A stretch of DNA of 64,000 nucleotides from Phyllobates terribilis. Lineage: Eukaryota. Below, piece by piece: positions 643-33,000 of this stretch. Position numbers and translations under genes: made by a program. The notes under the pieces were generated by a model, which ran no database searches, was not told the origin of the DNA, and saw only the letters and a program-made list of their open reading frames with translations. How positions within the stretch are numbered: the first letter of the stretch is position 1; each line of letters starts with the position of its first letter. The DNA lies in the NCBI RefSeq assembly GCF_046119375.1, contig NW_027362772.1, positions 222,952,001-223,016,000 of the forward strand, in the 5' to 3' direction.

Positions 643-1800
643 CTATATTCTCCAGCGAGCGGGTATCTGCCCCTTTGTGGTTCTGGTTGACCTCCTTAAC
701 CCACTGTCTGGTGGTGGACCGACCTGGCTTTCCCCACTAGCGTTAGGGGTACAGCTACCAGCTGGACTTACAGGCAGGGCAGGCAGCTGTCTGCAGGTCC
801 TTTGGCTTACCGCAGGCATGGCAGGCTCACTGTCAGCAGAGGGTTGACTCTCCTGGGCTGCTGGTACAGGCTCTTCTGTCTCTGGAACTGCTTGCTTTTC
901 TTCACCTTCCGGCTCTGGTGCAGGTTGTTGTTGAGCCGGTTGCAGGAAATGCAGGACGGGTACCACTATGGCATCGTTTATTCGGGTCCAGGACTGAGGA
1001 AACTCTCCGAGAACGGTGCTGATCATTTCTTCCTTGTCCTCTGCGGGTTCAAGGTCACTTTGATCCTCTTCTGCACTACGAAGTTGCTCAGGGCACCTTT
1101 TTAGGTGGTCTCTGGAGACGGTACTAGTGGTTTCTCCTCCATCCTTGGTGATCACGCACACCTTCAGGTTGTCGTGATCAGACTGCAGTACGGTGTAGGG
1201 TTCCCTTTCCCACTGGTTGTCCAACTTATGTAGCCTTCTCTTTCGCTTCAGGACCTGCTCACCAGGTTCTAGGGGACCAGCAGGGGCGTGTTGGTTGAAG
1301 AGTCTTTCTTGCTTCTCTCTCACCTGGGCCAGGCTCTTCTCCACACTCTCCTGTACCTTCTTGTACTGCAGTTGCCTTTCCGTATCCCAGTCCGCATCCG
1401 GGGAGGTGTCCTCAGGTGTTAGGGCTCCCATCTCCAGGTCTACGGGCAGCTTACCTGGTCTGGCTCGCATCAGGTAAGCCGGGGTGCAGTTTGTAGCATT
1501 CACCGGGATATGATTGTATAGGTCTATCAGATCCGGCAGTTTTTCTGGCCACAGGCTGCGTTCCTCCAGGGGCAACGTCTTTAGGAGATCAATGACTATG
1601 TTGTTCATTTTCTCACACATCCCGTTAGTTTGTGGGTGGTAAGGCGTTGTCCGAATCTTCTTACAGCCATAGAGGTTGCAGACCTCTTGGAAGATTTCAG
1701 CCTCGAACGCTGGACCCTGGTCTGTCAGGACCTGTTCCGGATACCCGTGTGGATGGCAGAAGTATTGCTGGAAGGCTCTGGCCGCCTTTTGGGCTGTCAA
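643..1800 (-). pseudogene. A1 integrase core and C-terminus (frameshifted part of pol)
   Basis: DQGPAFE and TTPYHPQTNGMCE DDE-core motifs. Separated from the upstream pol by a 26-nt deletion of LVVVPVKD relative to A2. Confidence 0.92.
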
Positions 1801-10782: not shown

Positions 10783-13002
10783 CCATTATACAGGAGGACT
10801 ATGGGGCTGCATTATACTATATAGGGCTGCATTATACTATATGAGGCTACATTATACTATATGGTGAGTGCATTATACTATATAGAGTTATATTATACTC
10901 TATGGGGCTACATTATAGCATTATACCATATGTGGGCTGCATTATACTATATGGCGGCTGCATTATACTATATGGGGATATGGGACTGCACTATACTATA
11001 TGGAATGTGCATTATACTATATTGGGGCTGCATTATACTGTATTGGGCTGCATTATACTATATGGGGCCGCATTATACCCTATGGGGCTGCCTTATACTC
11101 TATAGGGCTGCATTATACTATATTAGGATGCATTATACTATATGGAGCTGCATTATACCACATGGGGGCTGCATTATACCATATGGGGTGCACATTATAC
11201 TATATGGGGGCTGCATTATACTATATGAGGCTACCTTATACTATATTGGGCTGCATTATACTATATGGGGGCTGCATTATACTATATAGGGGCTGCATTA
11301 TACTATATGGGAGCTGAGTTATACAATATAGGGCCTGCATTACACCATATTGGGTGTGCATTAAACTATATAGGGCTGCATTATACTATATGGGGCTGTA
11401 TTATACTATATTGGAAAGCATTATACTATATGGGGTGCGCACTATACTATATGGGGGTGCATTATACTATATTGGGCTGCACTGTACTATATTGGGCTGT
11501 ATTATAACATATGGGGTGTGCATTATATTATATTGGGGCTGCATTATACTATATGGGGGCTTCATTATACTAAATAGGGCTGCATTATACTATATGGTGC
11601 TGCATTATACTATATGGCAGCTGCATTATACTATATGGGGGCTGAATTATACCATATGGGGGCTGCATTATACTATAATGAGCTGCATTATACTATATGG
11701 GGGCTTCATTATACTGTATGAGGCTGCATTATACTATATGGGGGCTGGATTATACTATATAGGACTGCATTATATCATACAGGGACTGTATTATACTATA
11801 TGGAGCTGCATTATACTATATTGGGCTGTATTATACTATATAGGGCTGCATTATACCATATGAGGGCTGCATTATACTATATGAGGGCTGCATTATACTA
11901 TATGGGGCTGCATTATGCTATATGGAGCTGCATTATAATATATTGGGCTGCATTATACTATATGGGGCAGCATTATACTATATAGGGCTGTATTATACTA
12001 TATGGGACTGCATTATACTATATTTTGGCTGCAATATACTATATGAGGGCTGCATTATATTATATGGGGCTGCATTATGCTATATGGAGCTGCATTATAC
12101 TATATGGGGCTGCATTATACTATATGGGGCTGCATTATACTATATAGGGCTGTATTATACTATATTTTGGCTGCATTATACTATATTTTGGCTGCATTAT
12201 ACTATATAAGGGCTGCATTATAGCATATGAGGGCTGCATTATACTATTTGGGGTCTGCATTATATCATATGGGGCTGCATTATACTATATGGGGCTGCAG
12301 CATACCATATGGGGTATGCATTATACTATATGGGGCTGTATTATACTATATAGGTCTGCATTATATTATATGGGGCTGAATTATACTATATGGGGCTGCA
12401 TTATACAATATGGGTTGTGCATTATACCATATGGGGTTGCATTATACTATATGGGGCTGCATTATACTATATTGGACTACATTATACTATATCGGGCTGC
12501 ATTATACTATATGGGGCTGCATTATACTATATGGAGCTGCATTTACACCATATGGGGCTGCATTATACAATATGGGGGCAGCATTATACTATATGGGGGC
12601 TGCATTATACTCTATCAAGTATTATGTGCAGTGTATTATACTATATGTACTATATGGGCACTGCATTATACTCTATCGAGGACTATGGTGTGCATTATAC
12701 TATGTGTACTATATGGGGGCTGCATTATACTCTATACAAAAACTATGGGGTGCACTATACTGTATGGAGGACCATGGGGAGTGCATTGTACTATATGGAG
12801 GACTATGGGGGGTGCATTATACAATATGGAGGACTATGGGAGCATTATACTGTATGGAGGACTATGGGGTGTGTATTATAGTATATGGAGGACCATAAGG
12901 AGTGCATTATACTATATGGAGAACTATGGGGTGTGCATTATACTATATGGAGGACTATGGGGTGCATTATACTATGTGGAGGACTATGGGATGCATTATA
13001 CT
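10783..13002. repeat. Satellite-like tandem array, unit about 20-22 bp (GGGGCTGCATTATACTATAT), lengthening to about 30 bp at the right end
   Basis: Directly visible, about 100 degenerate copies. A possible hAT-type terminus TCTAATCCTGGCCCTG lies at 13346-13361. Confidence 0.95.
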
Positions 13003-13519
13003 AAAAAAGCAAAATGGTGCCTATTCATTGAGTGATTGGATTGTTTATGCCGGAACAAAAATCATTGTTCAGCACATCGCCCAGTGTGAACTTACAGAAG
13101 TGCTGCTGATAACATGATACTGTATGGAGACAGATTAATCTACTGGTGATCATTCTGTCCCCATCATTCTTTGTCATCCTGTGTACAGAGACCAGGAAGC
13201 AAGAGTAGAATGACTTTAATATTGTCGATCGTGCTCGTTTAACGGCCTGAACTCAGCGCATGTAAATACAACCAAAATGTTTCTGTGTGCTTGTATGTTA
13301 GCATTTTGGGCCCCACTTTAATCTTTTGCCCAGGACCCCACTTTGTCTAATCCTGGCCCTGAGTAGGTGATAACATATTGATTGGTGGGGGTCTGATCGC
13401 TGGGATCCCCACTCACTGGGAATTGTTATCTCCAACAGAGCACTGTTATCCCCTTTTCAAAATGGAGCTGCAGGTCAAATGCCCAATGACTGCTTCATTC
13501 ATTTTCAATGGGTATGTTT

Positions 13520-14480: not shown

Positions 14481-15500
14481 GCTTGTTCACCTCAAGAGTT
14501 AAAATTTGTTGGGATGTTTTTAGGTTGGTGGTTATTTTGTGGATTGGAGTCTTCCAATGGGTTGTTCGATTGTCGCTTGTTATTGTGATTGATAGAGTTG
14601 GTAGCTTGCCTTTATGGGGTTCCTTAAGGGATATTCCCATCTTCAAGATCCTATCCCAATATGTAGTAGGTGTAATAGTAATAATATTAGCAAATACCTA
14701 CAATTAGAAATGTAGCATAGTTCTTCTGATTCGTTATCTCGATTACCTCATGTGCAGGGTATTGAAGTAGCTTATTGAGGAGGGTGTGGAGATGTCACTT
14801 TTGTTGGTGACGTCATTTGCATTCTTAAGGGAGTCAAGTCATGCTCCCTGTGACAATTGAGAGGGGTTCTTGGAGTTGGTAAAATTGTTGAGGCAGGGTT
14901 TTAAACTGGGTTGATGGTACCATTGGATTGTGTTTATAATTTGGTACTGGCCTGGAATATTGGGACCCTTCAAGGTGGGGACCCTTGGAGTTGATTGCAT
15001 GATATTGGGTTCCTGAAATTATAGGTTCTCCAGGCACTGTGGTTGTGAGAGGGGGTATTGCTGAAAGGTTAACATTTTCCGTACAGCTAAACTCTTGGAG
15101 CTCCAAGAACCTCCTTACCTAAAATTTGTTATTTATTTATGTTTGCAATAAAGGCCATTTTTTACCAGTTTAGTCCAAAACCATTAGACTGTCTTAATTT
15201 GGAATTTGGGGAGATTGGTGGAGGAAAGCTAAGTTAGATAGCAGCCAGCCTCTAAAATACAGGAATCATATAACAATGACAACTCCAGGTGCAAACTAAA
15301 AATGTTATAAATTATATATTATTAATATTGGAAAATATTAATTATTTCAATGCATAACTTGCATTTACTATTATTTCCTGCAGTAAAATTGTTATTACTA
15401 TTTATTATAGTTCAAGTCATAAGTTTGGCGTAGGATAAGTACACAGTTTGTCTTTTGCACTCTAAGGTGGAAGCTGGACAGGAACTGGATGGGAGATATC

Positions 15501-16114
15501 TGTCACTGAGATGGTTAGCAGTGGTGATGTGAAGGATAGAAAATCAGGCTCTGGCACAGATAGAGCTGAGAGGGTTTTTTAATGGGGCCTGGATTTTTAG
15601 GTCCAGGTTTTAGGAGCGTTCAGAAGAGCTTGTTGGACCCAGCAGTGATCTCCACTTTCTGCTGCTAATTGACACCCCGTTGCTTGATATTTAAAAACCC
15701 TCATTGTCTACAGAGATTCGCCAGTGATTGAACTATTTTCCCTTTCTCAGGCCTGAAGTACTATCAGTCGGCTCGTTTCTTCTTTGAGTTTCTAGGTGGA
15801 TTATTGTCGTCTTCTCTCTGGTGTCTTCTCAAGCTAAGTGTATCCCCTTGTCTGTTTTCTTTGTTTGTCTATAGTTGCAGTGGGGGCTGACTAGTGCTCA
15901 CCCCTTCCCCTCCCTATCTAGGACCTAGCTCTAAGGACAGTTATGGATTAGGTACCCTGCTCAGCGATAGGTGCGGAACCTATTTTGGGATGGTAGTGTA
16001 GTCAGGGTGTTGTAAGATCGGCCTAGGGGTCTCCACTCTCCTATTCCCTAGTTGTTGGGATTCCCCCCTTTTCCCATCGTCATACACTTGGTCCTTCTTT
16101 TACCTAGCGTGACA
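15501..16114 (+). mobile_element. Probable isolated LTR
   Basis: TGTCA...GTGACA termini and ATTTAAAA TATA-like box near 15689. No matching target duplication. Confidence 0.45.
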
Positions 16115-17647
16115 GTAGGTGTACCTTCCCAGCATCTTTTCCTTTGATCACAGTTAGAGTTCTGGGAGGTTATTCTTGCTTCATTTATTTTTGGTTCTCC
16201 TTAGTTTTCCTGATCTCCCCATTATGAATGGGCTTTAAGTTTGTTCACCCTGGGTCTTAGTGTCCACCTGCACTCTTTCCTCTCCCCTTGTTAGTCTTTG
16301 TGTAGTGGCCTCCCCTCTTCTTCCTCAGGAGGCACCAGAAACCCCTCGATGGGCTTTTAGGGAGTAAGGTTCAAGATGGTCTTTTTAGTTGTGCAGCTAG
16401 GGATTGTCTAGTCTGTACAGGGACCAGTAGGATGTGAGTTCGGCTTCTCTCCGTAATAGGTCGTCCTTATTCCGGTTACCCGTGTGTGACTGTGTCACGT
16501 TCATAAAAGCATAGAGCTGAAATGGAGCTCTATGTTTTATTTATTTTACTCACTTATACACAACCATTAATTCCACAGCGCTTTACGATCATCAGCGCCG
16601 AACATGTTTCTCTCTAGCGATTAGATGAGATTGCCACTTGAAATACTCTTCCTATTTATTTCTGTTGTAAAATGGCCTACTGTTCATATGTCCAGTCTTT
16701 TAAGCTTTCTTTCTGCTCAAGGATTTAAAAAATGACTGATGGGAGAAAAAATGAGTGCCTCACTTTTATAAAACATCTCCCGGAGGAAAACTTTCTAAAT
16801 TATGCACTGTCAAATCAAAAGGCTGTAACAAAAAAGGCTCCAGGAAAATTACTCTGCAAACTCCACCAAAAACTCTTCAAAGAAAAAAAATGTTTCTTTA
16901 AACAGTTTCCACTAGAAAACTCTGCTTACTTGAAGTCGCTTTACTTTTTTGACTGGTTTTCACTGATGTTTTTTCATTCAAATCCATCAAAATGGCACAT
17001 GTAAATCATGAATTTAGCACAAAATCCAATATTGTCCTTTTTGCACGATCTGTGAAAGGATGTAAAAAATGCACTAAAATAACTTTCATACGTAAAATCA
17101 CTCCAGTGGGCGACTGGAGTAGAGTGGAGCTAAATTTGATGACTTCTTGAAAAAGTTTAATTTCATGAATTTATCTAAAATATGTGGAAAAGTCACACTG
17201 ACGTAAAAAACAGAAAACGAGCTAAACCCCAAATACGACTTCAAATTGTTTGATGAATTTGTCACAAAAGTCACTAATTGAGAAGTAATAATGCCAAAAA
17301 ATGGCGGAAATGCAATGATGAATCCGGCCCTCTGTGTTTACACAACCTTAAATGGACCAGAATCACTGGTCCTCTTCTCCACTTACTAATTAGACATGTA
17401 TGTTGTATATCATTGATATGCCATAAATGTTAGTAATATTAAATGCAAAGAAACATTAAATTTGTATTTTTTTTTAAAGATTTTTTTAATAAGAATTGCA
17501 TGGAGGAATTAATAGATGTTCTTGGAGGGGCCATTGCCTTCTGCAGTTATTTCTTGGTGGTCAGGTACATGGCACAAGTCCTTCCGCACAGGTACAGCCT
17601 TGATGGTGGAGATGCTGTACTTCCTTCAGGGCGCTAGATGTGGAGGT

Positions 17648-17653
17648 TTTATT
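17648..17653 (-). terminator. Candidate polyadenylation signal of the kinase gene
   Basis: AATAAA on the minus strand about 23 nt after the stop codon. Confidence 0.45.
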
Positions 17654-17675
17654 CCTATGAGTTATCTCTGGTGCC

Positions 17676-20600
17676 TCAGCGGCAGCCGGCAGGAATACAG
17701 CTTCCTCCGATGAAGCGAGCAGCCCTGGATAATCCTCGCCGGCAGGATGATATCACCCGGCGGAAGATGGAACCTATGAGAAGAGATATAAAAATAATGT
17801 CAGTAATGGGCCTCCATATTAGAGGATACTGGGACAGGACAGTAGAGGGGTCTTCTCCATACAGAGGTACGGGGTCATTGTCAGTCATCATACATGTGAC
17901 AATCCCACCACTGACAGGTAACATCTGCTCCACGTGACTTCTTCTCACTGACGTCATACAACATGGAGCCTATTGTCACACTTACCTCTTCTACTTTCCA
18001 CTTCTTCTACTTTCTCCGGTTTCTGTTTTTTTCTCAGTTTTAATACAGATTTTCTGCTCTTCTTAACTGGAAATTCTTATAAGAAAGTAAAAAAACATGT
18101 TATTATAAACTCCTAACACATTAGCTTTATATCTTTATGTAGCAGAACTATTTTATTCTTATACCCTATAGTCCGGGCATTCTGGTATTTCATCAGCGCA
18201 GAATATGTCATATGTACAAGGCATCACCTGAGAGCTTGAGCATTAGATTAATATGGACTAGTAGGTTTCATGTGGTGTCTGTTCCCTTATTAATATACAA
18301 ATTGCCTCTTCAGAGAGGAAGAGAACTTGAACTCTAGCACCCCCTATTGGAAGTCGCAATCCTAAAAGTCAATATCGACTCTTTAAAGGGGATCTGTCAG
18401 CACACTTTTTCTATGTAATCTGAGAGCAGCATTATGTAGACCCTGATTCTAGAGATGTGTCACTTACTGGACTGTGTTTTGCTGTTTTAATACAATCAGT
18501 ATTTTATCAGCAGGAGATTATCACTGCAGGAAAAGATGCCTTGTGCATCTTAGTCCAACCACACAACACTGATTAGCAGCTCTCTGTCACTATATAATGT
18601 ACACAAAAACTGAGCTCTGCTGGATCTGCAGCAGAGAAAACTATTCCTCAATCCTAACTGCTGCACCCAGTAACTAAGTGACACATCGCTGGAATCAGGG
18701 TCTCTGTTCCCACCTCATGCTGCTGTAGGATTTCATAGCAAAAACCTGCTGACAAATTCCCTGTAACTAGCGCTGCCACATGACGTGGGATAAAAGCCAA
18801 ACCGGACGCTCAATCTGCAGACGTGTTTCGGGGTGATTGCAAAGCAAGAGTTTTATTTCTAGGGGAAATGTCTCCACTTGTGGAGAGTGACTTGCCTGAC
18901 ATAGCCAGAAGGAAAGTGAATAAAAACCAGCCGGTGATGTACTTCTTCCAATAAATATTATGTTGGTTACAGAAGAAGAAAAGTTACAATTAGGATAGGA
19001 GAACATCTCCGCGATATTTCACATAACAGCAGAAAGCGACAGATCTCACCTGCTGGAAATCCTCCTATCACCGCACACTGCAGACGCATCTACTGTCACT
19101 GCATGTGGCATCGAGAGAACTGATCGTCTGCCCCGTGGTGGGAACAGAAAAAGCCATTTACTGCATACAGACACTTTCTGGATGTTCACACTACTGTAGA
19201 TATGATTTTTCCCAATGGAATGAACTTATAAAGGGAACTAATGTTTCATTACTAGCGCCACAATATTCCTTTCCATGTAATTATCTGATATTCACTGTTA
19301 CAATAGATTTGCCTTGTTACTGGTTTTGGTTTTCCCTTTTTCCCCCTTGCTATGGATTATGCATCATCACTGTGGGTTGCGTTGAGGCTTACATCCTATA
19401 CCCACTGAAGTTCAGCTGCTACATTCTCTATTTTCCTGTGATGGCTTACACTGGTAAGACGTCTTAAAGACCAGAGGAGCATTGCATGCCCTATAAGACT
19501 CATCACGCTGGCATGTGACTCTCCACAAGGCGAGACGTTACCCCTTAGATCTCTTATTCATATGGTATTATTTGCAGCATGCCACAGTGTTCTCATATAA
19601 TCAATTAGATAAAACCTCAATGTAACTATAACGGCATAAAAGCCCATATCAAGCTATAGGCAAAGTGTTCAAGATCAGTTTGGCTCAAAACTGTGAGACC
19701 GCATTTAACGGACACCAAAAAAGAGAATTTCTACGCACTGAAGTTCAAAAAAGTAATGATCTTCTGAGCCTCCTTGTACACATTCACATTGTACTCTGAT
19801 CATAGACTATAACAAGATGTGCTATACACCTGCACATACCTGACGATGTGGAGGAGGATGACGTGCCTTCTCTAGCAGTGAGATCAGTTCCAGGAGAAGA
19901 TTCTTTCTGTCTGTTTGGTAGAAGAAAAACATGTAAATTACAAGTAAATCAATAGAAAATGTTAAGACACCAGTATGCAAGGCCAATTAGATCAACATGG
20001 AGGGGATATTCTGTCCAGGACCCTCCTCTTCTATTAGGAAGAATTGAGATCCACTAAATATTATGGCCCTCAGTGACTGGAAATAAATGACTGGTAGTCA
20101 GAGTAATCACAAGCCAGAGCCACAGTGATCAGCAATAATGGATTGGTGACTGCTGGATTTTATGTTGTGTTACTTGTATCTTGTATATGTTGTTCTGATC
20201 ACATTATATCGGATCTAAACCCCACAATATTAATCTACTCACATTTCTGAGTGTTTTTTTCTTTTTTCTATGGGAGAATTCACTGGAGGCTCATTGGGAT
20301 CCTCATTATCCATCACCCTAGTATTGGTGGTACATAGCTAAAATACAGAGAAAGATAAAATGTAAAACATACATCGTTCTGAACTTTTTTTAATTATAGG
20401 TTTTGCAGTTGTAATGGGTCTCAGACTTACATTAACAAGCCTTTGAGTAGATGATACAAAGTTGTGGCTTTCTTGCCAGTCATTCTCCTCGCTTGTATCC
20501 CCTTCACTTGAGTCCATATGTTTGTATATCCAGGAGTGAGCTACAAAGTGTAAGTACAGTAGTATCAGAGATTATTAGAATAAAACACTGTCACACAAAA

Positions 20601-23600
20601 TCACCATGTTATCACTAATAATGATAGGAACTGATTGTCACATAAAGTGAAAAACAAGACAAACAACAGTTTGTTCCAGATGACGTCTCATTCTACTTAC
20701 GTTCAAAGTGGCTGGTGTCCACGTCTGACACCAGATGAGGAACATACAGGGGCCTCTGACTTAGAAGGTTGGCAAAGTCTAAGTTACGCAGGAACGGATG
20801 ACTCTTAATCTCATTTGCTCCTCCTGGAAAAGGAAAACAAAAAAAAATCTTATACAGACATTATCAGAGACTGCTACAAATCCGTATAGTTTGCATTTAT
20901 CTCAACTGCAGATGTAGCAAAGCCTATGTGAGTTAAATATACTGAAAATCATAGCATGACGAATGGGAATAGGACAAGTAGGAAAAGTAGAGAATCTCAG
21001 TGCTAATTCACATGGACATGATCTTCTATAATAACTTATTATTAATAATATTATATACATTACTTGTCCCAAGTCTTTGCGCTGGATTTTTTCTGAGCAT
21101 CGCAGTGATGATGTCCTGAGCTTTGGGTGGGAGAAGGAAATTGTAAAATTTCCAAGCTACATTATCTGTCAAAAAAGGAAAAAAAAAAATATATTACAGA
21201 AAGTAAAATCTCTTCATTTATTGTAACATAAAAACCTCTGCTTAACAAAGAACTAAACCTAAGAACCAATCTAAGCAAGTGAACCAAATAACAAGGACAT
21301 TACATAGAATTCTGTTTATTTTACTTACCCCTGCAAATATTGTCAAGAACCTCAATTATAGAACTCCCATCAAATGGTACAAATCCTAAAAGAAATTTAT
21401 ATAGGATGATTCCTATTGACCACCAGTCAACAGGTCTTCCATAGCCTTTCTGAAGTATGACTTCTGGGGCTATGTAATAGGGAGTGCCAGGCATCTGGAA
21501 ACCAACAGAAGAATGAGATGATGATCAATGAATAGAATTGTCACAAATAACATCAATGGAAATGTTTTTTAGATGAGCAAATATCATAGAAGCTGAAATA
21601 GAAGAGATCTCTAAAGAATAAAACCCTATACGTAATGCTGACCTTGTCATCACAGAACTCTCTGGTGATGTTTTCCCTTAGAGACTTGTAGATGTCTGAT
21701 GTAGGTCTCATGAGGCCGATTTTTGAAAGCCCAAAATCGGTGACCTTAATGTGTCCAGTTGATGTTATCAGGAGACTGTGAAAGAAAAGACAGTGTTAGC
21801 CCCAAGTAATAACTCATAGATTGTATAACAAACTCTACATTTCTTCCCCTTTATTATAGGGGTCACTTACTTCTCAGGCTTTAGGTCTCTGTGCACCACA
21901 CCATAGCTATGCAGGTATTCCACAGCGAGAACCGTTTCTGCAATGTACATGCGGGCCAAGGGTACAGGTAAAGAACCATCGAAAGGACCTCCGAGCTTCA
22001 TAAGAGTGGCACAGTCTCCTCCTACAGCAGGAAAAAAAGACAGCTGAGGGTTTGTTACAATGTAAACCACACATGAATGAATGACCTTCTGAATGAAAGA
22101 TAAGTGGAGATATTGAGGTAGGGCGTAATACCTAGAGATATACTGTATAAGAGGAGCGTATATTATATACTTTAGAGTGGCCCTATATAAGAAAATAGAG
22201 GAGGACCCAATCTACAAGCCTCTTATTTCTCTATGAAAGTGCTCATCTATGCAAACTGCTAAAATAATGTCAAATCCTCCTTTTATCCGTAGCAGAAATG
22301 ACAGACTTTACTCAGTGAGGACGAACATGGGAGACTTTCACAGAGATAAGTAATTTTCCAGGCAATTTGGTAATAGATGACTAATAGTAATTGCAGTGTG
22401 GACATTTAATGGTCGTCCATGAGGACATTTAATGGTCGTCCATGTGGACATTTAATAGTCATCCATGTGGACATGTAATCGTCATCCATGTGGACATGTA
22501 ATCGTCATCCATGTGGACATGTAATCGTCGTCCATGTGGACATGTAATCGTCGTCCATGTGGACATGTAATCGTCTTCCATGTGGACATGTAATCGTCGT
22601 CCATGTGGACATGTAATTGTCATCCATGTGGACATGTAATCGTCATCCATGTGGACTTGTAATCATCATGAATTAGATGCTTGGAGTTCAGGAGACATGG
22701 GCCGAATGTAGATACAATATATAATGTCCTACCTGCTACGTACTCCATGACCATACACAGATGAGACTTGGTAGGAAAAGAGCATAACATGGAGACCACA
22801 AAGGGATTATCAGCGAATGCTAGGATGTCCCTCTCTTGAAAGGCCCGCTCAACTTGCTCTGGCTTCCTCAGGTTCTGCTTGTTCAGTTTCTTCATAGTGA
22901 ATACCTTGTTGGTGTCTTTATGATGCACTAAGTGGACGGCTCTGGAGGAGAGGAAAATCCATGATTTAAAATGAATCCTTATTAACAGACTGTTTATAGA
23001 CCACATCAAATGGTCTTCTGTACTAATGGTTACTAGGTTAACACTAGATGTACGGTCATTAGAAATCCATGTATAAATACATAAGATCACATTACATAAA
23101 TGATCACCTATGGGAGGTTCTCACGCCTGTCACATCCTAGCTGATTATATAGTGACATTGATGTGGGTAATGTATATAATGCCAACATAAAACTCACCCA
23201 AATGTTCCACTGCTGAACAGTTTGATTGATTCATAGTCGTTTTTACACGGCTTTTTCTCTGGATTCAATGATCTGATCAAGGCCTAGAAAAGAAAATTAC
23301 ATTTTTTAGACATAAAAGCTGCAGGAAAATCCTAGCTCCAGATGAAGGAACTTCTCACTGCCTGCCTGATACATGGACCTCCACAGACACTGTTGTATTA
23401 TAGGGGATATCCTCCATACACATATGTGACTGTACAACAGGGGGGTATAAGGGATATCACACAGAGGAGTCAGCAATAAAACTGCTGTCATCACACACAA
23501 TAGATATGATCTACACTGAGAATAGAGCTATCCCATCGTCTCCTGGGGTATAATATTGGATGGATTTCACTCCCCGTTATCTGATGATATACAGACGTCT

Positions 23601-25102
23601 CCCTCGGATACTTACACTGTCAGATTCGTGGATCTTTGGTGTCTCATCTATTCCATGATCAGTATTTCCAGATACAGTTATTTCTAAAATAATAAAGAGA
23701 CATCACGTATTAGACTACACCAATACCTGACATATAGCACATAATATATAACATATCACTATAAAAAGTCTGCAGGACTGCACCTCTGTAAATGGTATTA
23801 GCACTGGGTATATAGATATTCTGCTCACACTGTATATATTCATGGCATGTCCATAGATAGCAGTCACAGCCTCATATACAGGATAGAGCGTAAGGCCTCA
23901 TTCAGACGGCAGTTTGATCAGAGTTTCATCAGTTTTTTCACTGATGAGAAACAAAATTAAAGTTTCTCCACCTTCTCCTATCTGTCAGTCAGCGAAAATC
24001 AGAAAGGATAGCACTCGTCCATGAAAAACTGACGTGTGAATGAGGCCTAAATCTACATATTCTCAGGTGTCTCTATATTATTTAGATGTGTGTAAGAATA
24101 TTAGATGATCGGCTTACCTTCTATCAGATCACTGTTTAGCCCCCGCTGACTGGTATTAGGCTCCGGGACATATAGGTTTTTCACCTTTTCAAAGTAACCT
24201 TTTGATGTTCCCTGAGGGTTATATGTACAATTAATATAACATTTCATAAATAGTAATTTGCCGTATACATAAAACAGAAAGGACTAAACCTGATTTACTG
24301 GATAATTTCAGTATTGGACGGACTATACACGGCCGCTCCCTCCAGTAAATCCAGACTAATATATAACAAACTTGTATATACAATTGTTCTCTAATAACTG
24401 CTATTATCAGAACTTTACAAGAAGGAAGACTGTGATGATTGGATGAGAAAGAGGCGGAAATACAAACTCTGCGCCACTGAGTCCAGGCTGTCATCACAGA
24501 TGATGGAGACGCAGAGACAGGCCTGGAGCCAACATGGAGGTCTCCAAAATCATAAATCTGTCCTTCTACTAAATTACTGGTAATCTGGAGATCAGACCAC
24601 AAGGACATATGGTATAGAAGATGATGGATCCTTACCGGGACTTCCAGTGTATACTCCAGTACATACAGGACATTTTGGGCCAGTTGTTTGAAAAAGGCCA
24701 ACTCTCCACTCTGGGATTTTTTTTCAGCCTGTATAGATGAAAACAAAAAGAAAAATCAGAAAATCAGGTTCTATATTATATTAATAGAGGTCGAAAGAAA
24801 AGAAAAAATGTAAATAAACTAGTCTGCTATGATTATTATTCATTATTATTTTGTGCAGATTGTCTGCATCTTACCTGTTGTACTAATGTCCAGATGTTCA
24901 TCTGTAAATGCTCAAGATATTTTGAGCTTATTTGACCTTGGTGGTATTTGGTCAGGCAGTCTTTTACAAGCTCCATAACCAGCCGGTAAGTGAAGCTGAT
25001 GACGCCATCAGGCAGGGGTAGCACGAAGTCAGGGGTGTAGGTGGTAACAATCCCCTGGAGCAGTGCCAACACCTGAAGTTTTTCGGGAGGAATTCTCCGC
25101 AT
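17676..25102 (-). CDS. MAST-family (microtubule-associated Ser/Thr kinase-like) protein without a PDZ domain; 16 coding exons, about 638 aa
   Basis: Exons 5'->3': 25102-24875, 24728-24636, 24211-24118, 23683-23616, 23283-23198, 22941-22733, 22021-21871, 21775-21643, 21494-21329, 21165-21064, 20823-20701, 20540-20431, 20337-20243, 19910-19840, 18075-17986, 17773-17676. All introns GT-AG with matching phases; sum 1917 nt with no internal stop. DUF1908-like [11 protein letters not shown], then [41 protein letters not shown] and the AGC tail DTSHFE. The start ATG is tentative. Confidence 0.92.
18387..18762. mobile_element. Intronic MITE (TTAA-targeting, T2/Kolobok-like)
   Basis: TTAA|AGGGGATCTGTCAGCA ... 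TGCTGACAAATTCCCT|GTAA inverted termini. Confidence 0.72.
22397..22669. repeat. Intronic 23-bp minisatellite (GTGGACATGTAATCGTCATCCAT), about 12 copies
   Basis: Directly visible tandem array. Confidence 0.93.
23893..24048. mobile_element. Intronic MITE (156 bp)
   Basis: 16-bp inverted repeats AGGCCTCATTCAGACG and CGTGTGAATGAGGCCT (1 mismatch). Confidence 0.75.
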
Positions 25103-25734
25103 TTCAAAGAAATCCAAGCGCGGTTAGGATATCACTAACTTTGTAGCCAAAATCACTAACAACAATGACACCTGGGCTGTAAACACTGGTGTTAGTAGTG
25201 GTGGTGAATTGTGATGTCAGAATGGAATCCTGTGATGTCATGATGGAATCCTGTGGTGTAATCTTAAAGAGGCATCTTACTTTACAAGGAAGTTGCCTAC
25301 AAACACTTAAGGCGGCAACACCATAGTCTGAGCATCAGTACTAGACTCAGGCATGGAGGAAGAGCCATGGCTGCTCCTGAATACTGAAATTCTTAGGGGT
25401 CTTTATATTCGGAAATTCTTAGATGCTAGATTCCAGATGCAAATCGTTCTTCATATGTGTCCACATTTACACTTTTCTGGATATTGTGACTTCTTGTTTC
25501 ATAGATACGATTTCATTATATTAAGAAATTACATTATATTAAGAAATACTTGATTCATATCTGGCATACCAATTGACTACAATGTGAGCGTCCAATAGTA
25601 GTGACTCTCATACCAGTAGATAGGCTCCGAATCAAGAAAAGGGGAAAGAATATGACAAGAAATGCATCAAACCACGAGGCCATGTTCCTACGTAGCAGAA
25701 ATGCTGCATTTTTTTCACTGCCTTTTTTGTTTAA

Positions 25735-26390
25735 CCCCTTCACGACGCGGCCAATTTCCGTTTTTGCTTTTTTGTATTTTCCGCACCTTCATTCAGCACC
25801 AGAACTTTTTACATTTTCTCTCCACATAGACATACAAGGGCTTGTTTTATGTGGAATGAGTTGTACTTTTGAGAGATACCATTAATTTTATGACAGAGTG
25901 TTCTGGAAAACACAAAATAAGTTCCAAGTAGGGAGAAATTGTGAAGAAAACGCAATTCTGACATTGTTTCTTGGAATTGCTTTTACAGTGTACATTTTGT
26001 GGTAAAAATTACCATGCAGTATGATTCTGCTCCTCAGTATGATTATGGCGATTCCAAACATATCCAGTTTTCTTTTATTAATTTAATGGTGAAAAAAAGA
26101 TCAGAAGTTTGCAATAAAACATTTTAGTAGTTGTGTCGCCATTTTCCTCGACCTGTAATCTTTTCATTTATCGGTCAGTGGAGCTGAGTGATGGTTTATT
26201 TTTTGTGGGGTGAGACAACGTTTTTATTGATACCATTTTGGGATAGATAAGAAGTTTTGTTTGCTAGTTACTGAATTGTTTGTGGTGTTCTTGAATTCTT
26301 TTTCATTTATGGTGTTTACTGATTGGGTTCATTATTTTTAATTTTGAAAGATCTGACTTTTCTGAATGCAGCTATACCACTTTTTTTATA
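25735..26390 (+). mobile_element. Left part of a TTAA-flanked piggyBac-like non-autonomous element
   Basis: TTAA|CCCCTTCACGAC terminus. The interior resembles 55300-56216, which ends in AAGGGG|TTAA. Confidence 0.55.
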
Positions 26391-26394
26391 TATA

Positions 26395-26610
26395 CAGTAC
26401 AGACCAAAAGTTTGGACACACCTCATTTAAAGATTTTTCTGTATTTTCATGACTTTGCAAATTGTACATTCACACTGAAGGCATCAAAACTATGAATTAA
26501 CACATGTGGAATTATATACTTAACAAAAAAGTGTGAAACATCTGAAAATATGTCTTATATTCTAGGTTCTTCAAAGTAGCCACCTTTTGCTTTGATGACT
26601 GCTTTGCACA
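26395..26610 (+). mobile_element. Tc1-like transposon left terminal fragment
   Basis: TA|CAGTACAGACCAAAAGTTTGGACACAC, a Tc1-type terminus I recognise from fish and amphibian elements. Confidence 0.75.
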
Positions 26611-27004
26611 ATCTTTTTGACTTTTTACACACTGTTTTTGACTCTGGCTATTATGCATGATTCAATGTCCCCTGTCCATTCTCCTTTGAATATGATGGGC
26701 ACCTTGCCTTACGAGTCCCCAGCCCGCAAACTATTCACTTGATGTGGATGCATGGGGAATCACAGGCTATTTTTTGCTGTTACCACGTGACTCCTTTTGT
26801 ATCCCGATTTATGCCAATGCTATGACTTGAACACTGATGTTTGAGATTGATGTATTTAATAAAGACTGTTTTTTATTCAGCTACTCCTGTTTTTCTCTTG
26901 GTTTGGTATGCTGTTGGAGTAGAATTTATGCTGAGCTAACTTTTATGGTCTATCAGCTATGTTTGCTTTTGGGCATGTACTTAAGGCTGCTGTATATCTA
27001 CTAA

Positions 27005-28511
27005 TGGTCCCCATATTGCAGACATGGTCCCCATATTGCAGACATGGTCTCCCATCCAGGTCCCCCATATTGCAGACATGGTCTCCCATTCAGGTCCCCC
27101 ATATTGCAGACATGGTCTCCCATCCAGGTCCCCCATATTGCAGACATGGTCTCCCATCCAGGTCCCCCATATTGCAGACATGGTCCCCCATCCTAGTCCT
27201 TATCTTGCAGACATGGTCCCCCATCCAGGTCCCCCCCATACTGCGCACATGGTCCCCCATCCAGGTCCCCCCCCATACTGCGCGCAGGGTTCCCCCCCCA
27301 TACTGCGCGCAGGGTCCCCCCCATACTGTGCACAGGGTCCCCCCCCATACTGCACGCAGGGTCCCCCCCATACTGCACACAGGGTCCCCTGTCCCCCCCC
27401 ATACTGCGCACAGGGTCCCCCGTCCCCCCCCCATACTGCGCACAGGGTCCCCGCCCCCCGTACTGCGGACAGGGTCCCCCATCCCCCCCCATACTGCGCA
27501 CAGAGTCCCCCGTCCCCCCCATACTGCGCACGGGGTCCCCACCCCCCCCAATACTGCACACGGGGTCCCCATCCCCCCCATACTGCGCACGGGATCCCCA
27601 CCACCCCCAATACTGCGCACGGGGTCCCCATCCCCCCCTATAATGTGCACGGGGTCCCCGTCCCCCCATACAGTGTTCAGGGTCACCATCCCCCTATACA
27701 GTGTTCAGGGTCCCCGTCCCCCCATACAGTATTCAGGGTCTCCATCCCCCATACAGTGTTCAGGGTCCCCGTCCCCCCATGCAGTGTTCAGGGTCCCCGT
27801 CCCCTCATACAGTGTTCAGGGTCCCCGTCTCCCCCATACATTGTTCAGGGTCCCCGTCCCCCCACACAGTGTTTAGGGCCCCCATCCCTCCATACAGTGT
27901 TCAGGGCCCCCATCCCCCCATACAGTGTTCAGGGTCACCGTCCCCCCATACAGTGTTCAGGATCCCCGTCCCCCATACAGTGTTCAGGGTTCCCGTCCCC
28001 CATACTGAGCACAGGTCTCCTGTGCTGTATTTCACATGACAGAGAAAAAAAAAAAAAAGATTCTCACCTGTCCTCCGTTCCCTCGGCGTCCTTTCTGCAC
28101 CCGTGGCCCGCAGGCACAGACCCCATAACGATCACGGCTCTCTCCAGCAGCCACCATCAGCGTTGTAGTGCAGTGTATTGCCGCGCGGAGACTGGCTCTC
28201 TGCACAGCAATACCAGTGTCAGCCGCCGGCCTATCACAGGTCAGCAGCTGACATCTGCACATGGCAGTAATGTCATACGCTGCTGCGCTGGGACGCAGAT
28301 GTCAGCTGCTGGCCTCTGATAGGCCGGCGGCTGACACTGGTATTGCTGTGCAGAGAGCCGGTCTCTGCGCGGCAATACACTGCATTACAGCGCTGATGTC
28401 GGCAGCTGCTGGAGAGAGCCGCAGTCGTTACGGGGTCTATGTGCCTGCGGGCCGCAAGAAGCAACCGAAGGGGCCGCATGCGGCCCGGGGGCCCCGTGTT
28501 TGAGACCCCTG
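27005..28511. mobile_element. hAT (Charlie-like) non-autonomous element remnant with GC-rich minisatellites and a large internal palindrome
   Basis: Right terminus GTTTGAGACCCCTG (28498-28511) followed by GTATAGAT. Tandem arrays at 27005-28010 (34-bp, then about 22-31-bp units). Inverted repeat 28103-28258 / 28295-28455. Left terminus not found. Confidence 0.65.
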
Positions 28512-30029: not shown

Positions 30030-33000
30030 GGTGGATGTCCTGGGTGAAGGCCGCCAGCCAGCCAGCCAGAGAAGTCTGGCAACATGGAGGAGCTCATAAA
30101 GCACCTGGTGCAGAGCCAACAATAGATGCAACAGCATCACTTGCAAAGCCAGCAGCTGCACCAGGAGATGACCAAACTGTTGCTTCAACAGATCCAATTG
30201 CAGCAAAAGGCACAGCAGCAGCAGGAGCAGCAACAGCAGATACAGCTTCTGGCGGACGTCATCCAGGGCAGGGCAACCGCCCCAACCCCAGGGCCGACTG
30301 ATGACTCCCACGTCAGGAAGGAGGTAAGAAGTGCCATGAAGAAGATGACCCCTGGGGATGATGTGAAAGCATTTCTCACAGTCTTTAAGAGGGTGGCTAA
30401 TTGGGAGAGACTTCCACCAGAACAGTGGGCAGAGGTTCTGGCACCATATTTGTCGGTGCCAAGGAATACGCCAAGCTAAAGACAGATCTTAGCACACCTG
30501 GGAGTGAATATGGTGGTGAGAGCCCAACGAGTCTACCACTGGGCGTATGCCAACGACAAACCCCCTCGCTCGCAGATGTTTGACCTACTGCATCTCGTTC
30601 AGAAGTGGTTGCAGCCAGAGTCCTCCAATCCAGCCCAGATGGTCGAGCTGGTGGTGATTGATAGATTAGTACACTCCCTTCCCAAGCCAGTACAGACTTG
30701 GGTTGCCCAGGGTGATCCCAAGAACGCAGATGACTTCATCGGCCTGGTAGAGAGGTACCAGGTGGTTGAGAAATGCATCGGGAAACCGGATATAGTCACT
30801 TCTCCGCACTGGGATACCCAAAATAGGGCAGACTCACCACGGAAGGGGTCTAGAGCCACCACTGGGGGGCGTCCCACTCCCACTGAAGGTGCCACAAGGA
30901 CTGTTGATAAAGATATAGTCTGTTGGCGGTGTCACAACCCTGGACACGTAGCCGCCAGGTGTCATATGTTCCCTGAGCCCATGGACTGCAACCTAGGCAG
31001 ACGGGTTTCCTATTATGCTTATCCAGCCTGCAGTGTGGACTGTCGACCCGGCGAGGGGCCGCAAGCGTGTGCCGTGTCCATTAATTGAATAAAGGTGCTT
31101 GGACTGTTGGACTCTGGGAGTCTGGTGACTTTAATCAGAGCTACCCTTCCCCACCAGTTGATCCCTTCCAAAACTGTGGGCGTTCGGGGCATCTATGGGG
31201 ATGCCAAGGACTATCCTGTGGCCACAGTGACAGTGGGAACAGAGTGTGGTGCCCAGTCCCACGAAGACAGGGTGGTTAAGGACCTGATACATCCCGTCAT
31301 ACTGGGCCGTGATTTTTCTTTGTTTTGGGACTTGTGGGGGAAGGGAACAGGACTAAGCAGCGTGGGCAAAAGCCAGGTTCCTGGAGAAGAACCCCCGATG
31401 AAGTCTCAGGTGGAAGAGTTCCCACTGTGCGTCCTTGCCGGCGACGAGGGCAAGCCGGTGACCGAGGAGGCTGACCTCCCTGAGTTAGATATGTCCGGAG
31501 AAAACTTTGGGACTGCTCAAGTTCGAGACCTGACCTTAAAGGGGACATTTGACCAGGTTACCGTATGTAATGGGGTTGCCCAAGAACCGGGGGCCGACAC
31601 CAAGTTCCCCCACTTTGCAGGGGGAGTTGCTATATCGAGTGGCCAAACTAAGGGGCGGTGAGATAGTGGAACAGCTGTTAGTGCCGGAGCCATACAGACG
31701 GTGGGTACCAGATATGGCCCATTCACATGTCCTAGGGAGACACGTAGGGGTTGAGAAAACTTAGGAGAGGATACTGAGAAGGTTTTATTGGCCAGGGTGT
31801 TACCAAGAAATTCAGAACTATTGTAGATACTGCCCCACCTGCCAAATAACCGCTCCCTCTTCTCACTTCCGTAGTCCATTAGTTCCACTACCGGTGATAG
31901 AGGTCCACTTTGAGAGGATTGCTATGGACCTAGTAGGGCGCTTAGTCAAATCAGCCTGAAGTCACCAATATATCCTGGTGATCATGGACTATGCGACCCG
32001 GTATCCAGAAGCAGTGCCGCTCAGGATCTCATCGAGTAAATGCATAGCCAGGGAGCTCGTCCATATATTTGCCAGGACCAGTCTGCCGAAGGAAATCCTG
32101 ATGGGCCAAGGGACCTCGTTCATGAGTAAGGTAATGAAGGAGCTGTACAAGGTTCTCCAGATTACCCAGCTGCGAACCTCCGTTTACCATCTGCAGACAG
32201 ACGGCTTAGAAGAGCGCTTTAACAAGATCCTGAAAGTAATGCTCAAGAAAGTCGAAGAGAAGCATGGACGGGAGTGGGACTACCTGCTGCCCTTCCTGCT
32301 CTTCTCGGTAAGGGAGGTTCCACAAGCCTCTAGCATTTTTTCTCCATTTGAGCTCATGTATGGACGACATCCGCGAGGGCTCCTGGACATCGCTAAGGAA
32401 ACCTGGGAAACCGAGGTTACGACACACCAGAGCATCACTGAACATGTCGCCCAAATGCAAGAAAGAATAGTGAAAGTGATACCAATCGTGAAAACGCATC
32501 TCTTCCAGGCACAGGCAGCTCAGGCAAGGGTCTATAACAGATTGGCGAGGCTGAGGCAGTTCCAACCTGGGGACCATGTTTTGGTGCTAATCCCTAGCAT
32601 CGAGAGCAGGTTCCTGGCCAAATGGCAAGGTCCGTACGAGGTGGTGGAGAAAGTCAGCGAGGTTAATTATAAAGTCCACCAGCCTGGCCGAAGAAAGCCG
32701 CACCAAATATACCATGTGAATTTGCTCAAGCCATGGTGGGACTTGAAACCCGTGGAAACTCCTTGTTTGGGAGCCAGTCCGAAAGCCAAAGAAGAGGACG
32801 TCACGCTAGCAGGACGTCACGCTCTATCGCTGGCCCAAAAGCAACAATGTAAAGAGCTGCTGCAACGGAACCGTGACCTGTTCTCAGAGTTTCCAGGGCG
32901 TACGCAGGTGGTCGAGCATGACGTGCTGACAGAAGCGCATGTTAGGGTAAACCTCAAACCCTATAGGATTCCTGAAGCCCGCCGTGAGGAAATCTCAGCC

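What the first reader, a model, noticed from the sequence alone, without database searches (positions are those of the whole stretch)
17676..25102. Intact, compact MAST-family kinase gene with no PDZ domain and a novel basic C-terminus
Seen: 16 GT-AG exons with matching phases give an open frame of about 638 aa. It has a partial DUF1908, a kinase with Lys, alphaC Glu, HRDLKPEN, DFG and APE intact, an AGC tail, then a short Ser-rich and Lys/Arg-rich end ([22 protein letters not shown]...[21 protein letters not shown]). Known: canonical MAST1-4 are much longer and carry a PDZ domain after the kinase; MASTL/Greatwall has a large kinase insert, which is absent here. Inference: this is a fast-evolving, lineage-specific duplicate that lost PDZ targeting but kept catalysis. 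It stays intact in a 7.4-kb island surrounded by transposon debris, which suggests selection and possibly membership of an expanded, uncharacterised kinase subfamily. The basic or amphipathic tail could replace the PDZ as a localisation signal.
Basis: partly seen in the sequence, partly recalled or inferred. Interest (0 to 1): 0.8.

Follow-up and report, generated by a model that had tools for sequence, protein, structure and literature searches.

The report
Short frog-only MAST4-like kinase gene
This is an intact, transcribed 16-exon gene for a shortened MAST-type protein kinase that lost its PDZ domain and gained a near-invariant basic tail; it belongs to a large, fast-evolving kinase family seen here only in poison frogs and a few related frogs, which databases name automatically but which no paper I could find describes.

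Summary
On the minus strand, 25102-17676, sixteen exons with fifteen GT-AG introns give a 638-aa open frame: the DUF1908 four-helix bundle, a complete AGC kinase, an AGC tail, a Ser-rich stretch and a basic end. Spliced RNA contigs confirm eight junctions exactly, including the last two (N-O, O-P). A ninth (M-N) is placed 3 nt off, in the same frame. No contig splices onward, and the 64-kb window holds no PDZ exon.

The gene is not a one-off. It aligns end to end with about 100 predicted "MAST3/4-like" proteins of 600-720 aa from Ranitomeya, Dendrobates, Phyllobates, Anomaloglossus, Engystomops and Rhinoderma. These form one clade inside MAST4 on a long stem. Its closest relative is an Anomaloglossus protein (71% identity).

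Catalytic residues are nearly invariant across the family. So is a tail motif, [20 protein letters not shown] plus a Cys cluster, which is absent from MAST1-4 and from Pfam.

Most likely this is an active minimal MAST kinase whose PDZ targeting was replaced by a new basic amphipathic, Cys-rich module. dN/dS could not be computed because no relative's DNA was served.

The scan has noted the same family on other DNA of this genome (s1-217961 and four others). I found no paper describing it.

The parts
24875..25102 (-). Exon A: start codon (25102-25100) and the first three helices of the DUF1908 four-helix bundle. An in-frame TAA lies at 25126-25124 with no AG between it and the ATG.
   Evidence: DUF1908, E 3e-9; 2M9X residues 12-82. 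The start position is shared with relatives P0179, P0181, P0175, P0204, P0241 and P0215. Not tested with reads.
24636..24728 (-). Exon B: last helix of the bundle.
   Evidence: tblastn: 77-89% identity to P0178 and P0175, 84% to P0207; the bundle continues to 2M9X residue 111 in the family. GT-AG.
23616..24211 (-). Exons C (24211-24118) and D (23683-23616): variable linker between bundle and kinase.
   Evidence: 37-55% identity to relatives. AF2 of relative P0178 gives pLDDT below 50 here. X11 contig 3 carries 123 further letters upstream of exon E, which fits D plus part of C but lies outside the laid stretch.
20701..23283 (-). Exons E to K: AGC kinase domain (residues about 173-452). G-loop in E/F, Lys207 and Glu226 in F, HRDLKPE|N split across G/H, DFG and T-loop insert in H, APE in I.
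   Evidence: Spliced contigs confirm E-F, F-G, I-J and J-K.
20243..20540 (-). Exons L (20540-20431) and M (20337-20243): AGC C-tail (DTSHF...) and an acidic stretch.
   Evidence: K-L and L-M junctions are seen in contigs.
19840..19910 (-).
   Evidence: The N-O junction 19840/18075 is in an X11 contig. The M-N joint is placed 3 nt off, in the same frame. Family consensus S-[ED]-[IM]-Q-K-E-S fits the GT-AG model.
17986..18075 (-). Exon O: Lys/Arg-rich segment, ending in the RR of the tail motif.
   Evidence: O-P junction 17986/17773 in X23 (depth 41) and X25 (depth 25), with 0 differences over 94 nt. 59-74% identical to P0178, P0207 and P0175.
17676..17773 (-). Exon P: the tail motif [20 protein letters not shown], Cys-containing end, stop TGA at 17678-17676.
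   Evidence: motif nearly invariant in 45 proteins; highest hydrophobic moment of the protein, 0.85, net charge +6; no Pfam family.
17485..17675 (-). 3' UTR, with AATAAA at 17653 and ATTAAA at 17490.
   Evidence: The X23 contig runs unspliced from exon P to the end of the laid stretch at 17500.
22397..22669 (.). 23-bp x 12 tandem repeat inside intron F-G. Not part of the protein.
18380..18790 (.). MITE-like repeat with inverted ends inside the 1764-bp intron N-O. It is very abundant in RNA contigs and is not part of the protein.
   Evidence: word depth in the thousands over 18296-18892.

Best explanation
This is a functional, transcribed paralogue of a frog-specific family of 'mini-MAST' kinases derived from MAST4 by DNA-level duplication: all 15 introns are kept, so it is not a retrocopy.

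The protein keeps what Mast2 biochemistry defines as the catalytically sufficient core. That core is the DUF1908 helical bundle, which supports the T-loop, plus the AGC kinase and its C-tail. It has shed the disordered N-terminus, the PDZ domain and the long C-terminal region. In their place it carries a family-specific 55-residue tail: a Lys/Arg-rich segment, then the near-invariant motif RRGSIFRR[14 protein letters not shown], predicted to be a strongly basic amphipathic helix, then a Cys cluster.

Shown here: the gene structure, transcription and splicing of the 3' two-thirds, family membership, conservation of catalytic residues, and conservation of the tail.

Inferred: that it is an active Ser/Thr kinase (about 0.75). 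Also inferred: that the tail replaces the PDZ domain as the targeting or regulatory element, most simply by binding acidic membranes with S-acylated cysteines, with the RRGS serine as a possible phospho-switch (about 0.35). The overall confidence given (0.8) is for the core claim: an intact, expressed, selectively maintained member of this family.
For: - Open 638-aa frame, 15 GT-AG introns, and a start codon preceded by an in-frame stop.
- Spliced RNA contigs 97-100% identical to the window confirm E-F, F-G, I-J, J-K, K-L, L-M, N-O and O-P, plus a 3' UTR down to at least 17500 with a poly(A) signal at 17490. None splices elsewhere.
- End-to-end alignment (residues 1-638) with P0178 (64%), and P0204 of Rhinoderma (52.5%); P0179 and P0181 cover residues 1-637. 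28 proteins align through residue 630 or beyond.
- Family monophyly 100/100 inside MAST4 (100/99); sister to Anomaloglossus P0207 (100/99).
- Catalytic residues are kept in at least 99 of 102 relatives and in this gene.
- Only 4 of 93 family-invariant positions are changed, against about 15 expected if the 0.18 terminal branch were neutral (p 3e-4). Neutral point substitutions alone would leave the frame open in 3% of simulations at K = 0.06.
- Exon A matches the solved bundle 2M9X.
- In Mast2 the bundle is necessary for activity, while the PDZ domain and the disordered part of DUF1908 are dispensable (PMC12732324).
- The tail is 71-76% identical to near relatives, as conserved as the kinase. 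The motif is nearly invariant in 45 proteins, 41 of which have at least 2 Cys after it.
- The tail has the highest hydrophobic moment in the protein, and AF2 of P0178 predicts a helix at 613-637.
Against:
- The ten exonic differences in the RNA contigs split 6 non-synonymous to 4 synonymous, which is weak and compatible with relaxed constraint.
- Ala205 of the VAIK motif, a catalytic-spine residue, is Thr here. It is Ala in 98 of 102 relatives.
- Junctions A-B to D-E were not tested with reads, and G-H and H-I are not among the rows shown.
- The M-N joint is reported 3 nt off, with non-canonical ends.
- Contigs differ from the window at up to 3% in some exons, so part of the RNA may come from an allele or a very recent paralogue.
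- Depth on the exons is low (about 5-40) and the tissue is unknown.
- The 638-aa product itself is not among the database proteins, although other Phyllobates paralogues are.
- The tail helix has pLDDT of only 31-41, with no predicted docking.
- No experiment shows activity, acylation or localisation.
Confidence: 0.8

Rival explanations
1. A young, decaying copy: it is transcribed and still open by chance, but is no longer under selection and is on its way to becoming a pseudogene.
For: - Thr replaces the near-invariant VAIK Ala.
- It ranks 8th of 103 for departures from family-invariant residues.
- RNA-contig differences split 6 non-synonymous to 4 synonymous.
- Depth is low.
- The product is absent from the database protein set.
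- It is an isolated copy in a nest of retroelements.
Against: - The frame is open over 1917 nt and all 30 splice dinucleotides are intact.
- 89 of 93 invariant residues are kept (p 3e-4 against neutrality of the whole terminal branch).
- The tail and kinase are as conserved as in annotated relatives.
- It is correctly spliced and polyadenylation-competent.
- A loss of constraint only in the very recent past cannot be excluded.
Confidence: 0.12
2. The spliced RNA comes from a near-identical paralogue or another haplotype, and this particular copy is silent.
For: Contigs carry 0-6 differences per 100 nt in exons L, F and E and in the 3' UTR, and different runs show different variants. The M-N joint does not fit the window's GT-AG pair. 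The family is highly multicopy.
Against: Several contigs match exactly over long spliced stretches: 338 nt over I-J-K, 147 nt over O-P, and 92 nt of M. The nearest known paralogues are only 60-71% identical in protein, so any such copy would have to be a very recent duplicate or an allele of this same gene.
Confidence: 0.08
3. This is a fragment of a longer MAST gene whose upstream DUF1908 exons or downstream PDZ exons lie outside the reader's coordinates.
For: Some database relatives are 800-1100 aa.
Against: - tblastn of frog MAST4 finds nothing outside 25096-20696 in 64 kb.
- An in-frame TAA lies immediately upstream of the ATG, with no acceptor between them.
- The start and stop positions are shared with many relatives in four frog families.
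- The O-P junction is followed by an unspliced 3' UTR and a poly(A) signal.
- Family members carry no PDZ domain.
Confidence: 0.03
4. Alternative for the tail only (not exclusive of the core claim): the basic amphipathic helix is a calmodulin-binding or pseudosubstrate autoinhibitory segment of the CaMK/MLCK type, or a docking site for a conserved partner, rather than a membrane anchor. RRGS-I-F would then mimic or act as an AGC-kinase substrate site.
For: - Two Arg-Arg-x-(x)-Ser sites lie within a 23-residue near-invariant helix directly after a kinase C-tail.
- muH is 0.85 and net charge is +6.
- Weak language-model look-alikes include C-terminal parts of a calmodulin-dependent kinase and Pkinase_C tails, but at scores of 0.60-0.65, well below the 0.9 level needed to be meaningful.
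- Such strict invariance is more typical of a protein-protein or intramolecular contact than of lipid binding (my inference).
Against: AF2 does not dock the helix on the kinase (pLDDT 31-41). Mast2 shows only a slight preference, for acidic/polar residues N-terminal of the phosphosite, not for Arg at -3/-2 (PMC12732324). The conserved Cys cluster after the helix is unexplained by this reading.
Confidence: 0.25

Closest known systems
Canonical vertebrate MAST4 (e.g. Anomaloglossus MAST4, P0075, 2347 aa)
   Same: Same DUF1908 helical bundle directly before an AGC kinase, with the MAST-type T-loop insert of the same length. The kinase is 61% identical and the bundle 51%. The tree places the family inside the MAST4 clade.
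   Different: It lacks about 340 N-terminal residues (including the disordered half of DUF1908), the PDZ domain and about 1300 C-terminal residues. The T-loop insert EKDARE is remodelled to a family consensus E-[DE]-I-[TS]-R-E. It has a new C-terminal motif with no counterpart in MAST1-4. It is multicopy and evolves roughly ten times faster or more.
Predicted 'MAST3/4-like' proteins of dendrobatoid and other hyloid frogs (NCBI automatic annotation; e.g. P0178 of Ranitomeya variabilis, P0207 of Anomaloglossus, P0204 of Rhinoderma, P0241 of Engystomops)
   Same: Same start inside the bundle, same domain order, same tail motif and same length class. Identity is 48-71% along the whole protein.
   Different: This locus's own product is not among them. 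It carries a few private changes (I184F, A205T, L432M) and a shorter Cys end (two Cys after the helix).
Recombinant Mast2 truncations (PMC12732324)
   Same: The frog protein corresponds to the construct type that stays active in vitro: the helical bundle plus kinase plus C-tail, without the PDZ domain and without the disordered part of DUF1908.
   Different: Those are engineered fragments of a mouse protein. Here the same architecture is a natural gene with an added tail, and its activity is untested.
MASTL / Greatwall
   Same: A short MAST-related AGC kinase without a PDZ domain.
   Different: MASTL has no DUF1908 bundle and has an insertion of about 500 residues in the activation segment (PMC11961639 abstract). 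This gene has the bundle and a MAST-length T-loop, and it groups with MAST4.

Membership tests
MAST kinases (MAST1-4) | DUF1908 helical bundle immediately N-terminal of the kinase | tested here: met
   Pfam DUF1908 on exon A (E 3e-9). Exon A aligns to 2M9X residues 12-82 (E 7e-13), and the family aligns to residue 111.
MAST kinases (MAST1-4) | AGC kinase domain with catalytic residues and a MAST-type T-loop insert | tested here: met
   Pkinase on exons F-I; AGC kinases are the best PDB matches; K207, E226, HRDLKPEN, DFG and APE are present; the insert has the same length as in MAST4, but with a family-specific consensus.
MAST kinases (MAST1-4) | PDZ domain C-terminal of the kinase | tested here: not met
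   No PDZ-coding match in the 64-kb window with frog MAST4 as the query. Five family members have no PDZ domain in Pfam, while P0075 does.
MAST kinases (MAST1-4) | Phylogenetic position within one of the four vertebrate paralogue clades | tested here: met
   Family plus canonical MAST4 form a clade at 100/99, next to frog MAST4 at 89/89. AU tests do not reject a position outside tetrapod MAST4 (p 0.32) or outside all canonical MAST4 (p 0.31), so the age of the duplication is open.
MASTL / Greatwall | Kinase domain split by an insertion of about 500 residues; no DUF1908 | tested here: not met
   DFG to APE spans about 40 residues, as in MAST4, and the DUF1908 bundle is present.
Frog short MAST4-like family (unnamed) | Translation start inside DUF1908 at the beginning of the bundle; length about 600-720 aa | tested here: met
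   Model residue 1 aligns with residue 1 of P0175, P0179, P0181, P0204 and others.
Frog short MAST4-like family (unnamed) | C-terminal motif RRGSIFRR[14 protein letters not shown] followed by Cys residues | tested here: met
   Present in exons O/P. It occurs in 45 proteins including this one, always 20-49 residues from the end.
Frog short MAST4-like family (unnamed) | Falls inside the monophyletic short-protein clade | tested here: met
   Clade support 100/100; sister to P0207 at 100/99.
Frog short MAST4-like family (unnamed) | Protein kinase activity | not testable with these tools
   Only residue conservation is available.

The most novel reading that the evidence does not exclude
The mini-MAST genes are a previously undescribed, frog-specific branch of the kinome. 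They would be constitutively competent MAST cores tethered or regulated through a newly evolved, almost invariant basic-helix and Cys module. They were amplified to dozens of copies per poison-frog genome and evolve at least ten times faster than MAST4, because the variable parts are engaged in a lineage-specific conflict or specialisation, for example in the germline or in handling sequestered toxins. The tail would then be a new, portable targeting or regulatory motif.
Probability: 0.15. Interest if true: 0.8.

Novelty: new variant of a known kind. Interest (0 to 1): 0.55.

Why it matters
MAST kinases are treated as a fixed set of four long, slowly evolving PDZ-bearing proteins plus MASTL. 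Reviews of their evolution mention no amphibian expansion (PMC12024977).

Here a natural experiment has reduced MAST4 to the bundle-kinase core that Mast2 biochemistry found sufficient for activity. It then added a new, near-invariant tail and multiplied the result to more than 100 distinct predicted proteins across a few frog lineages, while catalytic residues stayed fixed.

That gives three things:
- an evolutionary test of which parts of a MAST kinase are essential;
- a candidate new targeting or regulatory motif;
- an unexplained lineage-specific kinome expansion in poison frogs, whose giant transposon-rich genomes are otherwise mostly discussed for their repeats.

For this single locus the result is more modest. 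It is one further, apparently unannotated, intact and transcribed member.

Tried and rejected
- dN/dS: I tried to fetch DNA for the nearest relative P0207, for the Phyllobates paralogue P0227 and for the Ranitomeya imitator protein P0202. All three came back 'no DNA, file too large', so no codon analysis was possible. As indirect substitutes I used invariant-site retention and a stop-codon simulation.
- PDZ or upstream DUF1908 exons elsewhere in the window: none found.
- Origin of the tail: no similarity to canonical MAST1-4, no Pfam family, and only sub-threshold look-alikes in the ESM Atlas.
- Docking of the tail on the kinase: AF2 gives a helix but at low confidence.
- Retrocopy origin: rejected, because 15 introns are kept.
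- MASTL identity: rejected.
- Timing of the duplication: AU tests were inconclusive.
- ENE-like repeats reported downstream of another family member (s1-209069): no repeats or inverted repeats of note in 15000-17700, and no Rfam match in the window.
- Literature: seven full-text searches and three papers read found no description of the family.
- Finding this locus's own product in the protein databases: no protein more than 71% identical turned up.


Full report
**What is there.** The feature lies on the minus strand. Translating the three minus frames of 16000-27000 shows a chain of short open stretches with MAST and kinase motifs. I fixed each boundary from the sequence and obtained 16 exons: A 25102-24875, B 24728-24636, C 24211-24118, D 23683-23616, E 23283-23198, F 22941-22733, G 22021-21871, H 21775-21643, I 21494-21329, J 21165-21064, K 20823-20701, L 20540-20431, M 20337-20243, N 19910-19840, O 18075-17986, P 17773-17676. 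All 15 introns are GT..AG, the phases fit, and the CDS is 1917 nt, which gives 638 aa plus stop. An in-frame TAA sits 21 nt upstream of the ATG with no AG between them, so exon A cannot be extended upstream in frame.

Pfam on single exons gives DUF1908 for exon A and Pkinase for exons F-I. Against solved structures the kinase exon matches AGC kinases.

**Transcription.** RNA-type runs of the same organism hold 11-24% of the sampled words of the locus, about the exonic share. Spliced contigs 97-100% identical to the window reproduce the junctions E-F, F-G, I-J, J-K, K-L, L-M, N-O and O-P. The last of these is seen in two runs at depths 41 and 25.

One contig continues unspliced from exon P through the stop to the end of the stretch at 17500. 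An ATTAAA lies at 17490. No contig joins exons M, N or O to anything else.

One oddity remains. The M-N joint is placed at 20246/19913, 3 nt from the GT-AG pair, with the same intron length and the same frame. Relatives read S-[ED]-[IM]-Q there, which fits the GT-AG model. I leave this unresolved between an allele or recent paralogue and the aligner's placement.

Junctions A-B to D-E were outside the stretch. G-H and H-I are not among the rows shown.

**No hidden PDZ.** tblastn of a full frog MAST4 (P0075, 2347 aa, with complete DUF1908, kinase and PDZ by Pfam) against all 64 kb hits only 25096-20696. The flanks are Ty3/gypsy-type retroelement ORFs and satellites.

**It is one of a large family.** A whole-library search with exon F returned several proteins of about 700 aa among the MAST hits. 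In a local BLAST the spliced model aligns from residue 1 with them.

Word-index searches seeded with three of these proteins list more than 100 distinct predicted proteins of roughly 470-1100 aa, mostly 600-720 aa. NCBI names them 'microtubule-associated serine/threonine-protein kinase 3-like' or '4-like', among other variants. They come from Ranitomeya variabilis (at least 40), R. imitator, Dendrobates tinctorius, Phyllobates terribilis (at least 11), Anomaloglossus baeobatrachus (at least 20), Engystomops pustulosus (4) and Rhinoderma darwinii (1). There is also a 579-aa ORF on a 2.1-kb Logan RNA contig (P0277).

No other frog, and no other vertebrate, contributed a short form in these lists. 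The lists are capped at 120 rows, so absence is weak evidence.

The model aligns over residues 1-638 with P0178 (64%) and P0204 (52.5%), and P0179 and P0181 cover residues 1-637. 28 proteins align through residue 630 or beyond. Five members tested have DUF1908 (profile about 130-239) plus Pkinase and no PDZ domain. P0207 is the exception: its annotated N-terminus differs and it shows no DUF1908 hit.

No database protein is more than 71% identical to the model, so this locus's own product seems to be unannotated. Earlier notes of this scan identify the genome as the golden poison frog and report the same kind of gene on five other pieces. One follow-up reached the same general conclusion for a tandem pair.

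**Origin.** In a 131-row tree and a 52-row tree with bootstraps, all short frog proteins form one clade (100/100) on a stem of 0.5 changes per site. That clade groups with canonical MAST4 (100/99), and within it next to the frog MAST4 (89/89). MAST1, MAST2 and MAST3 representatives fall elsewhere.

AU tests do not reject placing the family outside tetrapod MAST4 (p 0.32) or outside all canonical MAST4 (p 0.31). A MAST4 origin is therefore well supported, but the date of the duplication is not. Rhinoderma branches first. Engystomops groups with one of two large dendrobatoid clades (97/90), so at least two copies predate that split.

The window gene is sister to Anomaloglossus P0207 (100/99, 71% identity). 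The path between them is 0.44, against about 0.1 between frog and bird MAST4 on the same tree. Given the far older frog-bird split (established knowledge), the family evolves at least an order of magnitude faster than its parent.

**Constraint.** Across 102 relatives averaging about 50% identity, the catalytic residues are almost invariant. These are Lys207, Glu226, the HRD Asp, Asn310, the DFG Asp, the APE Glu and Arg440. The window gene has all of them.

Of 93 columns at least 95% conserved in the relatives, the window gene departs at four: I184F, A205T, C235N and L432M. If its 0.18 terminal branch were neutral, about 15 departures would be expected (binomial p 3e-4). Neutral point substitutions alone would leave the frame open in 3% of simulations at K = 0.06 and in 0.9% at K = 0.08. 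That estimate does not count indels or splice sites.

Two caveats apply. A205T hits the catalytic-spine alanine. The ten exonic differences seen in RNA contigs split 6 non-synonymous to 4 synonymous.

**What was kept and what was added.** Exon A aligns with residues 12-82 of the 112-residue solved MAST1 DUF1908 domain (2M9X) and with the MAST3 domain 1V9V. A family member aligns to residue 111. The 'partial DUF1908' is therefore the complete four-helix bundle, and only the disordered N-terminal half of the Pfam model is gone.

This matches Mast2 biochemistry. In Mast2 the bundle is required for activity, the disordered part and the PDZ domain are dispensable, and the bundle is proposed to support the T-loop insert (PMC12732324). 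The family's T-loop insert keeps its length but has its own fixed consensus: Ile346 in 100 of 102, Glu349 in 102 of 102 and Pro334 in 96 of 102.

AF2 of the relative P0178, run with a 56-row alignment, gives a confident bundle and kinase (pTM 0.70), a disordered linker and a low-confidence C-terminus containing a 25-residue helix.

**The tail.** The last 55 residues have 17 Lys/Arg against 4 Asp/Glu. Residues 609-628 have the highest helical hydrophobic moment of the whole protein (0.85, net charge +6).

In 45 proteins from Rhinoderma to Ranitomeya, the motif [RK]RRGSIFRR[IM][IL][12 protein letters not shown] is nearly invariant, including the positions that were not used to find it. It always lies 20-49 residues from the end, and 41 of the 45 have two to four Cys after it. 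It is as conserved as the kinase between this gene and its near relatives, at 71-76%. It has no counterpart in MAST1-4, no Pfam family and only sub-threshold look-alikes in the Atlas.

The tail is therefore novel relative to known MAST kinases, but it is a family character and not a peculiarity of this locus.

**Mechanism.**
- Shown: an intact, spliced, polyadenylation-competent gene of a MAST4-derived family, with fixed catalytic residues and a fixed tail.
- Inferred: an active Ser/Thr kinase built on the minimal bundle-kinase core.
- Inferred more weakly: the tail substitutes for the PDZ domain as the element that places or regulates the enzyme. A basic amphipathic helix followed by a Cys cluster is most simply a membrane-binding, S-acylated anchor. 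The RRGS serine at its start would be a candidate phospho-switch.
- The rival reading, a calmodulin-binding or pseudosubstrate helix or a docking site for a conserved partner, is not excluded. The strict invariance may even favour it.

**Novelty.** The proteins are in public databases under automatic names. Seven full-text searches, two MAST reviews or studies and the Phyllobates genome paper gave no description of a frog expansion or of PDZ-less MAST4 derivatives. I rate it a new variant of a known kind. This locus is one more member, apparently unannotated.

Noticed in passing
window 18296-18892 (intron N-O): A MITE-like element with inverted ends has a summed word depth of thousands to tens of thousands in all four RNA runs, with many internal 'joints'. 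It is evidently a genome-wide repeat that is abundant in transcripts.
   Followed up: no
window 17699-17897: Depth of 250-460 over exon P and the adjoining intron in three of the four runs (0 in X11), against 5-40 on the other exons. This possibly reflects reads from many paralogues that share the near-invariant tail exon.
   Followed up: no
window 643-4681, 31978-33099, 38143-39633, 49005-53258, 59711-61033: Several long ORFs have reverse transcriptase, RNase H and integrase domains (Ty3/gypsy-type LTR retroelements), on both strands around the kinase gene. They were only described, not reconstructed.
   Followed up: partly
window 10800-13003; 27004-28005; 62006-62735: Long satellites: a 20-bp unit x 88 copies with 31/59-bp variants; G/C-rich 23-90-bp minisatellites; and 35-36-bp arrays.
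   Followed up: no
window 22397-22669: A 23-bp x 12 tandem repeat (94% matches) inside intron F-G of the kinase gene. It creates long spurious open frames on the minus strand.
   Followed up: no
An Rfam scan of the whole window at gathering thresholds found no family at all. I did not try laxer thresholds.
   Followed up: partly
window 21774-21875: One X23 contig (depth 194) joins 21774 to 21875 with 5 extra letters and AC..CT ends, over the HRDLKPEN/DFG exons. It most likely comes from another kinase or paralogue rather than from this gene.
   Followed up: no
proteins P0195, P0234, P0238 (Ranitomeya imitator, Phyllobates terribilis): Some database models of family members are fused to reverse-transcriptase or RNase H domains. 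These are probably chimeric gene predictions caused by retroelements lying next to the kinase genes.
   Followed up: no
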